From the sequence record PP777464.1: a DNA stretch of 64,000 bases; one strand, written 5' to 3'. The translations under genes were made by a program, and so were the position numbers. The number at the start of each line of letters is the position of its first letter. Within the stretch, counting starts at the first letter, position 1. The notes beneath the pieces were generated by a model that was not told the origin of the DNA, did no database searches, and saw only the letters and a list, made by a program, of their open reading frames with translations. Of the stretch, positions 42,111 through 60,076 are shown in pieces.

Positions 42111-42138
42111 GGGACAAAGACGTTTTTGGTGCTATAAT
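42111..42138 (+). promoter_or_regulatory. Early/middle sigma70-type promoter for gp55-gp47-gp46
   Basis: GGGACA-N16-TATAAT with extended TG. Confidence 0.65.
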
Positions 42139-46247: not shown

Positions 46248-46723
46248 ATATCTACCATATTTAATTTGCCTTCCTTGATAAGCTTTCTGGCTTGCTTAAC
46301 ACGAGCAGCATTGTTTGCACCAGGGATAACACCTAACTCTTCCAGTATTGCATTCTGTTGTCCTGCTGGGAGCCTTTTAAACTTATTCGTATCGATTGTT
46401 AGTGCAGTGTGATGTATAACTTGCTCATCTTCAGGAATGCTGTTATTACGCTCCAGATAATCCGCAAGATTTCGTAGTACCTCGTATAAGGGTTTATCGG
46501 TTAAGTGCTTCATATAGCGATTAAAGCTGTTCTGTACTTTACCTTCCCATGCGTTCACTTCGTTCTGGAGAACTTCACGACAGTGTTGATTCTCGAAGTG
46601 ATAGTGATCAAGTACTGGCTTAGTGATTGGTTCCTTAATTATAGGATCAATTCCTTTTTGCTTCTTTAGTAATTCATTTCGATAGTTTGCAGCTTCTTTA
46701 CTATCTTTTAATCTTTTCTTCAT
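46232..46723 (-). CDS. gp49: Endonuclease VII (Holliday junction resolvase, gp49-like) lacking the Zn-binding cysteines
   Basis: LDH.H...C R.VL..EVNAWEGKV...FNR and L.NLADYL align with recalled T4 gp49. Late promoter CATAAATA at 46754-46761. Confidence 0.8.
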   Translation of the reverse strand: MKKRLKDSKEAANYRNELLKKQKGIDPIIKEPITKPVLDHYHFENQHCREVLQNEVNAWEGKVQNSFNRYMKHLTDKPLYEVLRNLADYLERNNSIPEDEQVIHHTALTIDTNKFKRLPAGQQNAILEELGVIPGANNAARVKQARKLIKEGKLNMVDIKKGS

Positions 46724-46817
46724 AAATCCCCACTAAACTAATTCTTATCAAAATATTTATGCGTTACTTCAATGTTCAAGAATTATGTACTTTTTATAAA
46801 TTTTTTATCATAATAGT

Positions 46818-46845
46818 GAGACACTTTTGAATTTGGTGCTATAAT
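46818..46845 (+). promoter_or_regulatory. sigma70-type promoter driving a non-coding transcript
   Basis: GAGACA-N16-TATAAT. The 14-mer TTTGGTGCTATAAT is identical to that in the gp55 promoter. Confidence 0.7.
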
Positions 46846-46851
46846 GTTAAT

Positions 46852-47304
46852 TGTAGTGATGACAATCCTGTTGAATGCAGAAATGCATATAAATTAGAAC
46901 CTGATCCTATCGAAAATGTAGATGGCAGATGAGCAGTTCAACAGTGCGATGAGCAGAAGAAACCCGTTAGATGTGGGCATAGTTTGAACCCCTCACGGCG
47001 ACACGGCTCAATAAAGAACTCCGATAAGCATACAGAGAGTTCCTCGATAGATGTATAAGGATCGCACCTTACCAGATTTGCTAAGGGAGTTTATTAAGTG
47101 ATTTAATAAACAGCCTGAAGTTTGATTGTATAGACTTTCAGGTGAGTGTCAGGATGATTAAGACTGACGACCGTTGCACATGACTGCGATAGAGAGAAAC
47201 AGAGCAACCCGCTTTCGTTCTTAATGAATTTTAAGAAATTCGCAATACAATAAATGCTGAAACCATCAGCGTCAAGAATTAAGAGACTTAATTGTCTCTT
47301 TTTT
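46852..47304 (+). ncRNA. Candidate large structured non-coding RNA (~450 nt), family unknown
   Basis: Bounded by a promoter and a terminator, with no credible ORF or SD. Core ~50% GC (59/120 at 46921-47040). More than 10 hairpins and long-range pairings (see findings). Confidence 0.55.
47281..47304 (+). terminator. Rho-independent terminator ending the candidate ncRNA
   Basis: AAGAGAC-ttaatt-GTCTCTT-TTTT. Confidence 0.8.
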
Positions 47305-47310
47305 ATTGTC

Positions 47311-47510
47311 TTCATTCCCCTGCGGGGGGATGAAAATGTCTTCAACAAATCCCGTCAAGTATTAAATCTTTTAAAGTTCTTTATAATTAATTATAAGAAA
47401 TGAATATGAGTTACGTAGTAACGAATATTCTTCAGCTAACGAATGAAATGAGTTAGATGAGTTCACTATAAAATAATTAATTCCTTTCATAATTCAATTC
47501 AATCAATTCT
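47311..47510. repeat. Cluster of inverted repeats and AT-rich DNA
   Basis: 10-bp hairpin TTCATTCCCC-tgcg-GGGGGATGAA (47311-47334), perfect palindrome TTATAATTAATTATAA (47381-47396), GAATAT..GTTAC-gta-GTAAC..ATATTC (47402-47430), and AATTC repeats (47491-47509). Confidence 0.75.
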
Positions 47511-47523
47511 GTAGTTTAAAACC

Positions 47524-47551
47524 AAAAAAAAAACCAGCAACAATGTGCTGG
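47524..47551 (-). terminator. Terminator after gp51
   Basis: CCAGCA-cattgt-TGCTGG-T10 on the minus strand. Confidence 0.85.
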
Positions 47552-47562
47552 CTCCTTGTGAG

Positions 47563-47772
47563 TTAGTGCTTCTCGTTTTGTTTTTTAATTTTCTTATTAA
47601 AAGACTTAACTAATAAGTCTCTATCAATTAGTGGCATATTAAGTAGTGTTCCGTAATCAACACTTTCCATATAAACAGAACACTCCATTAATGCAGTTTT
47701 AATATCTGACTTATTCAACTCAAATTCCTTAAGTACTTCTTGTATTTCTTCAGGAGATGAGTGGAGAAGCAT
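47563..47772 (-). CDS. Baseplate hub assembly catalyst (gp51-like)
   Basis: 69 aa, LLNMPLIDRDLLVKSFNKKIKKQNE, directly downstream of the gp26-like gene. Confidence 0.6.
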   Translation of the reverse strand: MLLHSSPEEIQEVLKEFELNKSDIKTALMECSVYMESVDYGTLLNMPLIDRDLLVKSFNKKIKKQNEKH

Positions 47773-60048: not shown

Positions 60049-60076
60049 GGAACAAAATCGTAAGTAGTGATACAAT
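60049..60076 (+). promoter_or_regulatory. Early/middle promoter for dsbA-polymerase
   Basis: GGAACA-N16-TACAAT with extended TG. Confidence 0.55.

What the first reader, a model, noticed from the sequence alone, without database searches (positions are those of the whole stretch)
46818..47304. Promoter-to-terminator ~450-nt structured non-coding transcript: candidate novel large phage RNA
Seen: the only long non-coding stretch in the window is a self-contained transcription unit. Its promoter (GAGACA-N16-TG-TATAAT) shares an identical 14-mer with the gp55 promoter, and it ends at a clean terminator (47281-47304). The core is ~50% GC against a roughly one-third GC background and ~20% in the flanks. 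Pairings found by hand: CTGTTGAA 46868-75/TTCAACAG 46937-44; ATGCA-GAAA-TGCAT 46875-88 (GNRA loop); GATCCTATCGA 46903-13 with 47044-63 (9-nt bulge; crosses the first helix, so a pseudoknot if both form); TGAGC 46950-54/GCTCA 47006-10; GAACTC 47016-21/GAGTTC 47037-42; CCTTA 47067-71/TAAGG 47082-86; a perfect 9-bp GTTTATTAA/TTAATAAAC 47089-47111; an 11-bp CCTGAA... hairpin 47114-42; GTCAG/CTGAC 47148-68; GTTGC/GCAAC 47173-47208; GAATTT/AAATTC 47226-41; GCTGA/TCAGC 47256-70. GATGAGCAG also repeats directly (46928, 46948). tmRNA, RNase P and tRNA end signatures are not evident. Inference: an ornate RNA (ribozyme, protein scaffold or sponge, anti-defence decoy, or replication primer).
Basis: partly seen in the sequence, partly recalled or inferred. 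Interest (0 to 1): 0.85.

Follow-up and report, generated by a model that had tools for sequence, protein, structure and literature searches.

The report
New multicopy pseudoknotted jumbo-phage RNA
The stretch is a real non-coding RNA gene of about 0.5 kb with its own promoter and a fold proven by compensatory changes; it is one of four to five regularly spaced copies in every Rak2-like jumbo phage, also occurs in a few small bacterial defence islands, and matches no catalogued RNA family, so its function is still open.

Summary
Window 46818-47304 has a promoter, a non-coding structured core and an intrinsic terminator.

It is not a singleton:
- The source phage (100% identical to Escherichia phage fEgEco12) has 4 diverged copies. 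Related genera (Munch, Hallingskeid, BF, GAP32) have 5, and RaK2 has 3.
- Each copy has the same promoter type and sits at a syntenic, evenly spaced position.
- 65 non-redundant copies give decisive covariation: helices are 99-100% paired, with many double changes.
- There are three loop-to-strand pseudoknots.
- G-U far outnumbers A-C, so the + strand is the one that folds.

The conserved unit runs past the terminator. It includes a G6 hairpin (47311-34), a 17-nt tail (47343-59) and a C(GNA)G mini-hairpin (47410-22).

There is no Rfam 15 match, no tRNA or tmRNA, no conserved ORF and nothing in the literature searched.

Unexpectedly, complete copies with the same promoter also lie next to integrases in rare ~10-kb Enterobacterales islands. 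Two of these were examined in full, and both carry defence genes. These island copies nest among the phage copies in at least 3 places.

Function is inferred only. I favour a locus-bound role, namely replication-initiation modules (0.3). A trans-acting RNP or ribozyme, or processive antitermination, are close rivals.

The parts
46818..46845 (+). Promoter: -35-like GAGACA, 16-nt spacer, extended -10 TG-n-TATAAT. The inferred start is near 46852.
   Evidence: The same architecture (TGGGACA or TGAAAC, about 15 nt, TATAAT) precedes all 65 copies, including the bacterial ones. About 37 promoters of this class lie on the + strand of phage BF.
46868..46947 (+). 5' pseudoknot domain. Strand 46868-75 pairs with 46937-44, which is the loop of a 3-bp hairpin (46933-35/46945-47). 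The domain encloses a variable hairpin (46875-88) and P2 (46901-03/26-28, 46906-07/24-25, 46909-11/21-23) with the near-invariant loop GAAAAYGTA, followed by AGATGAG.
   Evidence: pairing of each copy's own loop with its own 5' strand has a median of 8 contiguous bp. 78% reach >=7, against 14% for mismatched copies, over 27 distinct loop sequences. Pc is 100% paired with 33 double-change cells; P2 is 92-95% paired.
46950..47010 (+). P3 (46950-54/47006-10). It encloses an A-rich conserved junction, P4 (46964-67/46995-98) and a variable or deletable hairpin.
   Evidence: P3 is 100% paired, with 4/5 pairs showing double changes (58 cells). P4 is 100% paired. BF_3 shows CCGA/TCGG compensation.
47016..47042 (+). 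P5 hairpin (47016-21/47037-42); its sequence varies freely.
   Evidence: 91% paired, 6/6 pairs with double changes (149 cells), 22 extra pair types.
47043..47089 (+). Conserved junction (consensus CTnGATAGACATATAAGG), P6 (47056-60/47067-71), ACCA, and the invariant TAAGGGAG (47082-89).
   Evidence: P6 shows AAGG/CCTT, GAG/CTC, TAGG/CCTA and TGTA/TACA. TAAGGGAG is near-invariant in all 65 copies.
47089..47111 (+). P7 variable hairpin. In other copies it is the site of an optional ~45-nt inserted module (…ACAATATAGATCCGTC…).
   Evidence: the hairpin is kept with unrelated sequences. The same module recurs in P12 of other copies.
47114..47142 (+). P8 hairpin. Its loop 47125-31 is the 5' strand of pseudoknot PK1.
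   Evidence: P8b is 99% paired. PK1 (47125-31 with 47245-51) is 7 bp and 99.6% paired, with 7/7 pairs showing double changes (164 cells); slid controls give 28-41%.
47148..47168 (+). P9 variable hairpin.
   Evidence: 84% paired, 32 double-change cells.
47173..47251 (+). 3' core. It contains PK2 (47173-77 with 47204-08, the loop of P11), P10 (47185-89/47240-44), P11 (47192-96/47212-16) with the invariant loop GAAAC-n-G-nnnn-ACCCGC, P12 (47218-24/47231-37), and the PK1 3' strand 47245-51.
   Evidence: PK2 is 100% paired with 5/5 double changes; P10 is 99.7% and P11 100% paired. (tool): 13 pairs are 99.3% paired against 74% when shuffled, with 163 double-change cells against 37.5+-7.1 and 0/500 shuffles as high. 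Model R1 finds exactly the known copies.
47256..47276 (+). P13 region and the first CGTCAAG box.
   Evidence: CGTCA is near-invariant. The family helix (GACGA/TCGTC register) is only 65% paired in the alignment; this copy uses GCTGA/TCAGC.
47281..47304 (+). Intrinsic terminator hairpin plus T-run. This is an optional insertion in the family, although a T-rich run before P14 is general.
   Evidence: It is absent from paralogues C and D and from many other copies.
47311..47334 (+). P14 hairpin with the invariant GGGGGGATG 3' arm; the C/T-rich 5' arm varies.
   Evidence: It occurs only together with the large RNA (4 of 4 copies in the genome). There are 105 G-U cells.
47343..47359 (+). Conserved tail CAACAAAYCnCGTCA(A/G).
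   Evidence: The frame of the short ATG-initiated ORF differs between copies, so it is not a peptide (read off the aligned copies).
47360..47422 (+). AT-rich spacer, then the mini-hairpin GTTAC-GTA-GTAAC (47410-22), which has the form stem-C(GNA)G-stem.
   Evidence: 39/54 copies have such a hairpin within 200 nt of the tail, against 0.9 expected from shuffles and 1 on the opposite strand. The stems covary (CAAT/ATTG, CATT/AATG, CTAA/TTAG …).

Best explanation
SHOWN:
- This is a genuine non-coding RNA gene of a previously uncatalogued family.
- A phage-class promoter (46818-45) drives a core of about 430 nt. The core folds into at least 14 helices with three loop-to-strand pseudoknots and about 150 invariant or near-invariant positions.
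- The conserved unit continues through an optional terminator to a G6 hairpin, a 17-nt tail, an AT-rich spacer and a C(GNA)G mini-hairpin.
- Rak2-like jumbo phages keep 3-5 anciently diverged copies at syntenic positions; in the four 5-copy genomes these lie 52-85 kb apart.
- Whole copies, promoter included, were captured at least 3 times by small integrase-bearing Enterobacterales islands.

INFERRED (favoured mechanism):
- The copies act where they lie, as RNA-based replication-initiation modules of the T4-like replisome.
- A subset of middle-class promoters (5 of about 37 in BF) makes a folded transcript. This transcript marks or primes the site, as an R-loop or primer, or by recruiting helicase or primase.
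- The G-run hairpin, the AT-rich stretch and the mini-hairpin serve as the unwinding and single-strand priming signals.
- Islands pirate the module so that they are replicated, or so that they jam the phage, when such a phage infects.
- A put-like variant, in which the RNA modifies its own RNA polymerase, is the second locus-bound option. It is listed as a rival.
For: Real structured RNA:
- Covariation.
- G-U 186 against A-C 25 in the supported helices, so the + strand folds.
- Promoter and terminator.
- RNA-library contigs cover 46670-47365 more deeply than the flanks, with none at 47366-47626 (weak evidence).

Locus-bound role:
- The five copies are spaced 52-85 kb apart in four genera. The probability that five random points are this even is 0.0001-0.009, but these genomes are syntenic, so this counts as one observation.
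- Paralogue classes are conserved across genera rather than homogenised or lost.
- DNA-type signals downstream of the terminator are conserved with the RNA in both phages and islands.
- C(GNA)G or GCGNAGC mini-hairpins are known at single-strand priming sites, namely the G4 origin and RSF1010 ssiA (PMC13037366).
- T4 uses a few of its middle promoters as R-loop origins (my own knowledge).
- Islands that lack recognisable replication genes carry the complete module next to int.
Against: - Nothing shows replication starting here. Cumulative GC skew in phage BF simply follows transcription and has no inflection at the copies.
- Known primer or origin RNAs do not need pseudoknots or dozens of invariant unpaired bases. 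That pattern is typical of ribozymes, riboswitches or protein-binding RNAs.
- In most copies an intrinsic terminator lies between the folded core and the putative unwinding or priming signals.
- The common + orientation is not informative, because 89% of BF genes are on the + strand.
- The spacing pattern was noticed post hoc.
Confidence: 0.3

Rival explanations
1. Trans-acting ribonucleoprotein RNA. The folded ~450-520-nt RNA is released and binds a phage or host protein, acting as scaffold, sponge or decoy during middle infection. Several gene copies supply dosage. Island copies act as decoys or sensors.
For: - About 60 invariant and about 90 near-invariant positions lie largely in junctions and loops.
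- Peripheral hairpins are variable or replaceable and optional modules occur. This is the pattern of RNase P-like or riboswitch-like RNAs.
- The promoter and, in most copies, an intrinsic terminator define a discrete product.
- The related phage PA5oct makes abundant ncRNAs, although these are not homologous.
Against: - Even spacing and long-term retention of diverged paralogues at syntenic sites are unexplained.
- No conserved neighbouring protein gene was found in phages or islands.
- It is unclear why defence islands would repeatedly capture a phage helper RNA together with its promoter and downstream DNA signals.
Confidence: 0.2
2. Processive antitermination or leader RNA, similar to put. 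The nascent fold binds the RNA polymerase that made it and makes it terminator-resistant, so that transcription of the next 50-85 kb of co-directional genes is re-armed. In islands it serves as a portable, infection-inducible read-through cassette, for example one that reads antisense through the cI-like repressor gene.
For: - The element lies directly behind a promoter and is usually followed at once by a terminator.
- 4 of 5 BF copies sit inside long + strand gene blocks.
- The spacing would be explained.
- In five islands the RNA points at the 3' end of a convergent cI-like gene.
Against: - It is about six times larger than put or EAR.
- The window copy and the Serratia fonticola copy point against all neighbouring genes.
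- Only 5 of about 37 promoters of the class carry it.
- No NusG- or RfaH-like partner was looked for.
Confidence: 0.17
3. Ribozyme or RNA-only homo-oligomer, a GOLLD/ROOL-like assembly. The covarying loop-to-strand pairings (P1, PK1) would be intermolecular contacts that build a multimer, or the conserved core would be catalytic.
For: - Each paralogue has its own self-complementary PK1 and P1 sequences. Covariation cannot distinguish contacts within one molecule from contacts between molecules.
- ROOL, GOLLD and OLE proved to be homo-oligomers (10.1101/2024.12.08.627333, listed).
- Size, ornateness and phage context are comparable.
Against: - There is no sequence or model similarity to GOLLD, ROOL, OLE, raiA or any ribozyme in Rfam.
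- No cleavage or ligation signature was seen.
- The spacing is unexplained.
Confidence: 0.15
4. Not an RNA gene: a protein-coding region, a DNA-only repeat or a chance structure.
For: - GenBank annotates small ORFs here (g340 and g341).
- The single-sequence folding z-score is modest and alike on both strands.
Against: - The ORFs are not conserved.
- Compensatory changes keep 99-100% pairing in several helices.
- G-U greatly exceeds A-C, which implies one folded strand.
- A promoter is conserved in every copy.
Confidence: 0.02

Closest known systems
GOLLD and ROOL (large ornate RNAs often carried by phages and prophages)
   Same: It is a 0.45-0.6-kb non-coding RNA with many conserved helices and pseudoknots. 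It is phage-borne and of unknown function. Some of its 'pseudoknots' could be intermolecular.
   Different: - No match to their Rfam models, even at E<=10.
- It has its own promoter.
- There are 3-5 diverged copies per genome, regularly spaced in the 5-copy genomes, and they are not next to tRNA arrays.
- It occurs in lytic Rak2-like jumbo phages of Enterobacterales.
ColE1 RNA II and the T4 oriF/oriG R-loop origins
   Same: - A promoter lies about 0.5 kb upstream of an AT-rich stretch.
- The transcript has a defined fold.
- There is a G6 run.
- Hairpin signals downstream resemble single-strand initiation sites.
- In T4 only a few middle promoters act as origins.
   Different: - Those RNAs lack pseudoknots and invariant junctions.
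- No antisense RNA I-type partner is seen here.
- Most copies have a terminator before the AT-rich part.
- Origin activity has not been tested.
HK022 put RNAs (cis-acting antitermination RNA)
   Same: It is a folded nascent RNA directly behind a promoter, present in more than one copy per genome, and followed by terminators.
   Different: put is about 70 nt with two stem-loops and shows no homology. Some copies here point against their neighbouring genes.
phi29 pRNA
   Same: It is a phage-encoded structured RNA with its own promoter, and loop-loop pairings define how it assembles.
   Different: pRNA is 174 nt and single-copy, and its intermolecular loops are complementary between subunits. There is no similarity, and no link to packaging genes is seen here.
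Mini-hairpin DNA signals (G4 origin hairpin I, RSF1010 ssiA, N4 virion-RNAP promoters)
   Same: The downstream hairpin has a stem closed by C-G around a GNA triloop, with covarying stems. It is strand-specific (PMC13037366).
   Different: Here it is only one small part of a ~0.6-kb unit. Whether it acts as DNA or as RNA is unknown.

Membership tests
Any Rfam 15 family (GOLLD, ROOL, OLE, raiA, HEARO, RNase P, group I/II introns, tmRNA, 6S, riboswitches) | Covariance-model match at or near the family's gathering score | tested here: not met
   - 0 matches in the whole window at gathering scores.
- only terminator-like noise at E 0.1-10 in 46650-47650.
- none for five bacterial copies at E<=0.1.
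tRNA / tmRNA | tRNA-like acceptor and T arm detectable by ARAGORN | tested here: not met
   no tRNA or tmRNA in the window.
Protein-coding gene (GenBank g340/g341) | Open frame conserved among homologues, indels in multiples of three, third-position bias | tested here: not met
   the frame is open in 11/65 copies, length mod 3 splits 20/20/25, and substitutions split 351/329/329.
Structured RNA gene (generic) | Helices kept by compensatory changes beyond shuffled and slid controls | tested here: met
   - 99.3% paired against 74% shuffled, with 163 against 37.5 double-change cells and 0/500 shuffles as high; slid controls give 36-58%.
- PK1 has 7/7 and PK2 5/5 pairs with double changes.
Structured RNA gene (generic) | Own promoter and transcript evidence | tested here: inconclusive
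   - A promoter is conserved in all 65 copies.
- RNA-library contigs hold the element at higher depth than the flanks. However, these are contigs, not stranded reads, and DNA carry-over is not excluded.
- The one raw-read RNA run did not contain the phage.
T4-type R-loop origin | Middle-class promoter followed by a DNA unwinding element | tested here: inconclusive
   - The promoter belongs to a class of about 37 in BF. This class is reported upstream of DNA-synthesis genes in CBB (PMC5259590).
- An AT-rich stretch follows the tail, but it lies about 0.5 kb from the promoter and behind a terminator.
T4-type R-loop origin | Replication initiates at the site | not testable with these tools
   GC skew gives no signal either way. 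Marker-frequency or 2D-gel data are needed.
ColE1-type RNA II replicon | Antisense RNA I gene within the 5' part; RNase H-processed hybrid at the origin | tested here: inconclusive
   Minus-strand promoter-like sites are no more frequent than chance (5 found against 4.6 expected) and lie in non-conserved sequence. Hybrid formation cannot be tested here.
put-like processive antitermination RNA | Two ~35-nt stem-loops of put type; read-through of downstream terminators | tested here: not met
   The architecture differs. Read-through itself cannot be tested here.
Homologue of the PA5oct ncRNA001-004 | Match to the family model or motifs in the PA5oct genome | tested here: not met
   no motif match, and the best R1 hit has E 0.26, away from the annotated ncRNAs.

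The most novel reading that the evidence does not exclude
The RNA defines a new kind of replication origin. In this reading a large pseudoknotted transcript licenses initiation at 4-5 evenly spaced sites of a 350-kb phage chromosome. The small integrase-bearing defence islands that carry a complete copy, with the phage-type promoter, would then be the first satellites or parasites of T4-like jumbo phages. They would sense infection through the phage's own promoter specificity, and then either replicate on the helper's replisome or jam it.
Probability: 0.15. Interest if true: 0.95.

Novelty: categorically new. Interest (0 to 1): 0.85.

Why it matters
- Very few classes of large, intricately folded natural RNAs are known, and each has taught new biochemistry. 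This one has unusually strong comparative support and an easy genetic system, namely E. coli phages such as fEgEco12, 121Q and PBECO4.
- Its genomic behaviour is unlike any described RNA. It has ancient paralogues, even spacing, and repeated capture by defence islands together with a phage-type promoter.
- Whatever the function proves to be (origin, antitermination, RNP, ribozyme or assembly), it would open a new facet of jumbo-phage biology and of phage-island conflict.
- It also removes several spurious 'hypothetical protein' annotations.

Tried and rejected
- **Rfam:** searched at gathering and permissive thresholds on phage and bacterial copies. Nothing was found.
- **ARAGORN**: nothing.
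- **Literature:** searches on Rak2-like phages, jumbo-phage ncRNAs, ornate RNAs and literal conserved motifs found no description of this element.
- **PA5oct ncRNAs**: not homologous.
- **Coding potential**: rejected. The one 211-aa open frame, in RaK_3, lies on the pyrimidine-rich strand and is unique to that copy.
- **Candidate pairing** of 47003-06 with the tail: no consistent covariation on inspection, so it was dropped.
- **RNase P-like motif resemblances** that I noticed by eye occur in a different linear order and have no model support. Rejected.
- **GC-skew test for origins**: uninformative.
- **Strand orientation** as evidence for a cis role: rejected, because 89% of BF genes are on the + strand.
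- **Search for a conserved protein partner** next to the RNA in islands: none found.
- **Raw-read RNA run X23**: no phage reads, so transcript ends could not be mapped.
- **False pattern hits:** IMG/VR loci L049 and L072, and most of the 94 genome contigs pattern hits, are chance matches.
- **The count of structure pairs with a typed full-length structure:** not run, to avoid pasting a 905-character string. The same counts were computed in Python, and the tool was run on the stored structure of A4.

Full report
**Source.** The window is 100% identical to Escherichia phage fEgEco12 over the 861-bp query (PP777464.1, Asteriusvirus, a Rak2-like jumbo phage). Window position plus 148,877 gives the record position. 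The finding lies between the EndoVII gene (minus strand) and a small ORF plus the baseplate-hub gene (minus strand). The two small ORFs that GenBank annotates across it (g340 and g341) are not conserved.

**The observation.**
- The promoter (46818-45; 10/12 consensus with an extended -10) and the terminator (47281-47304) are found by the scan tool.
- The 14-mer shared with the promoter upstream of the gp55-like sigma gene is real (42125), and a third promoter of the class lies at 60049.
- GC rises to 0.49 in 46900-47050 against 0.22-0.30 in the flanks.
- Single-sequence folding is only modestly better than shuffles (z = -2.4; opposite strand -2.5). The sequence alone would therefore not have proved a structure.
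- Rfam 15 gives nothing at gathering scores in the whole window, and only terminator-like noise at E up to 10. ARAGORN finds no tRNA or tmRNA.

**A multi-copy family.**
- BLAST against the phage's own record finds three more copies, all on the + strand, at 59.9, 110.8 and 307.2 kb. They are 70-79% identical, and each lies in an intergenic gap.
- 72 phage records hold the element, all ~350-kb phages of this group (Escherichia, Salmonella, Klebsiella, Erwinia, Serratia, Yersinia, Cronobacter, Pectobacterium, and two labelled Xanthomonas). Most records listed show 4-5 places; the Klebsiella (RaK2-type) records show fewer.
- Munch, Hallingskeid, BF and GAP32 have 5 copies each. RaK2 has 3 by covariance model.
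- An IMG/VR motif scan added copies from metagenomic jumbo-phage contigs.
- Positions are syntenic. EndoVII-RNA-baseplate hub recurs in Munch, Hallingskeid and GAP32, and a copy follows the sigma-factor gene in both fEgEco12 and RaK2.
- A maximum-likelihood tree shows paralogue classes shared across genera, so the duplication is ancient.

**Structure.** I assembled 65 non-redundant copies (alignment A2).

| Helix | Window positions | Paired | Double changes |
|---|---|---|---|
| P3 | 46950-54/47006-10 | 100% | 4/5 pairs |
| P4 | 46964-67/46995-98 | 100% | 2/4 pairs |
| P5 | 47016-21/47037-42 | 91% | 6/6 pairs, 149 cells |
| P10 | 47185-89/47240-44 | 99.7% | 4/5 pairs |
| P11 | 47192-96/47212-16 | 100% | 4/5 pairs |
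| Pc | 46933-35/46945-47 | 100% | 2/3 pairs, 33 cells |
| PK1 | 47125-31 (P8 hairpin loop) with 47245-51 | 99.6% | 7/7 pairs, 164 cells |
| PK2 | 47173-77 with 47204-08 (P11 loop) | 100% | 5/5 pairs |

- Slid controls for these helices mostly give 20-45% paired and never exceed 65%.
- The tool's own count on the model-fitted 3' core gives 99.3% paired against 74% shuffled. It finds 163 double-change cells against 37.5+-7.1, with 0/500 shuffles as high.
Its 3' strand is the loop of the 3-bp hairpin Pc, so it is a third loop-to-strand pseudoknot. Own-copy complementarity has a median of 8 bp; 78% reach >=7 against 14% for mismatched copies, over 27 different loop sequences.
- In the supported helices, G-U cells (186) far outnumber A-C cells (25). 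This identifies the + strand as the folding strand.
- About 60 columns are invariant and about 90 more are nearly so, mostly in loops and junctions. Examples are GAAAAYGTA, AGATGAG, GATAGACATATAAGG, TAAGGGAG, CGACCG and GAAAC…ACCCGC.

**Boundaries.**
- The terminator hairpin is an optional insertion, absent from paralogues C and D and from many other copies.
- In every copy the sequence continues into a hairpin with an invariant GGGGGGATG arm (47311-34) and a conserved tail CAACAAAYCnCGTCA(A/G) (47343-59).
- An AT-rich spacer follows. In 39 of 54 copies, within 200 nt of the tail, there is then a stem-C(GNA)G-stem mini-hairpin with covarying stems. Shuffles give 0.9 such copies and the opposite strand gives 1. 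In the window it lies at 47410-22.
- RNA-library contigs from two studies cover 46670-47365 at higher depth than the flanking genes, and none covers 47366-47626. These are contigs and cannot prove transcript ends.

**Bacterial copies.** A motif scan of 185,579 species genomes found complete copies in a handful of Enterobacterales. BLAST separated them from chance hits: Citrobacter amalonaticus, Serratia fonticola, Serratia sp., Silvania, Buttiauxella, and unnamed Enterobacteriaceae. A BLAST of the E. coli genome set found it in 2 of 5426 complete genomes.
- These copies carry the same TGAAACA…TATA(A/C)T promoter, core, G6 hairpin, tail and downstream hairpin, and they have no Rfam match.
- In eight of the nine loci examined, the RNA lies just downstream of an integrase gene, either a large serine recombinase or a tyrosine integrase; no integrase was identified beside the ninth (L131). 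In five it converges on a cI-like S24 repressor gene.
- The Citrobacter element is a ~10-kb island between ppdD and nadC that carries a GmrSD-type nuclease.
- The E. coli element is a ~10-kb island between ffs and ybaA that carries the candidate defence system PDC-M45.
- Island copies nest among jumbo-phage copies in at least three places in the tree, so the module was exchanged repeatedly.
- The copies are rare: 1 of 401 sampled Enterobacterales genomes, and that one was the query genome itself.

**What it does.** Nothing computational fixes the function. Two features argue for a locus-bound role.
- First, the five copies are spaced 52-85 kb apart. The probability for random points is 0.0001-0.009, although the genomes are syntenic and I noticed the pattern post hoc.
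- Second, the complete module, with its promoter and downstream DNA-type signals, was captured repeatedly by islands that show no replication genes.

The promoter belongs to a class of about 37 in BF. This class was described in CBB and GAP32 with -35 TGAAACG and lies upstream of DNA-synthesis genes (PMC5259590). Only five promoters of the class carry the RNA, which recalls how T4 uses a few middle promoters as R-loop origins (my own knowledge). Mini-hairpins of the GCGNAGC type occur at single-strand priming sites (PMC13037366). I therefore favour RNA-based replication-initiation modules (0.3).

Four points count against this view:
- There is no skew signal.
- A terminator lies in front of the putative unwinding region in most copies.
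- The degree of tertiary-structure conservation is more typical of RNPs, ribozymes or polymerase-binding RNAs.
- Orientation is uninformative, since 89% of BF genes are on the + strand.

The rivals are a trans-acting RNP (0.2), put-like antitermination (0.17), and a ribozyme or RNA-only multimer (0.15).

**Novelty.** I found no model, motif or paper that describes it. The four ncRNAs reported for the related phage PA5oct are not homologous. As an RNA class it is new, and its genomic behaviour has no described parallel.

Noticed in passing
window 42111-42138, 46818-46845, 60049-60076: There are three + strand promoters of one class (G[AG][GA]ACA, then 14-16 nt, then TG-n-TA[TC]AAT). Phage BF has about 37 on the + strand and 3 on the - strand. 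The -35 element resembles ECF-type GAAC boxes, so it may depend on a phage sigma factor.
   Followed up: partly
window 47103-47315 (-) and 47371-47490 (-): The GenBank 'hypothetical proteins' g340 and g341 of fEgEco12 overlap the RNA and its downstream module. Their frames are not conserved in the other copies, so they are probably annotation artefacts. Related records carry similar small ORFs.
   Followed up: yes
window 47528-47569: A terminator-like hairpin scores on both strands (CCAGCA…TGCTGG, flanked by an A-run and a T-run). It lies between the RNA module and the minus-strand small ORF and baseplate-hub genes.
   Followed up: no
paralogue B, L011:2300-2360 and 2540-2590; many other copies (alignment A2 columns ~430-480 and ~630-660): A ~45-nt module (…TTTATACAATATAGATCCGTCCAAAATT…) recurs as an optional insertion at the tips of two different hairpins (P7 and P12), in both phage and island copies. 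It may be a docking or protein-binding motif.
   Followed up: partly
L273 (Citrobacter amalonaticus P55, G001:C1:505.8-515.2 kb); L272 (E. coli LR-29-1, NZ_AP027515.1 ~3,472,500-3,483,600): These ~10-kb integrative islands share the layout int, RNA, unknown ORFs, a ~200-aa resolvase and a defence cargo (GmrSD-like, or PDC-M45). The Citrobacter island also has a cI-like repressor. They may form an undescribed island or satellite family.
   Followed up: partly
many copies, e.g. L033:90-130 (BF_5), L038 (GAP_5), L012:2345-2375 (paralogue C): Several paralogue classes begin with a strong hairpin followed by a T-run directly after the -10 box. This could be a 5' protective hairpin or an attenuator.
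   Followed up: no
L101 (PA5oct MK797984.1 21951-22401): The RNA-seq-defined 451-nt 'lncRNA' of PA5oct, which makes up 1-5% of phage reads, has no similarity to this family. It is a separate unexplained jumbo-phage RNA.
   Followed up: partly
L157:4270-4326 (-): The sRNA STnc450 (Rfam, 66.5 bits) lies immediately upstream of the tyrosine-integrase gene of the island in Enterobacteriaceae bacterium RIT714. It may mark the integration site.
   Followed up: no
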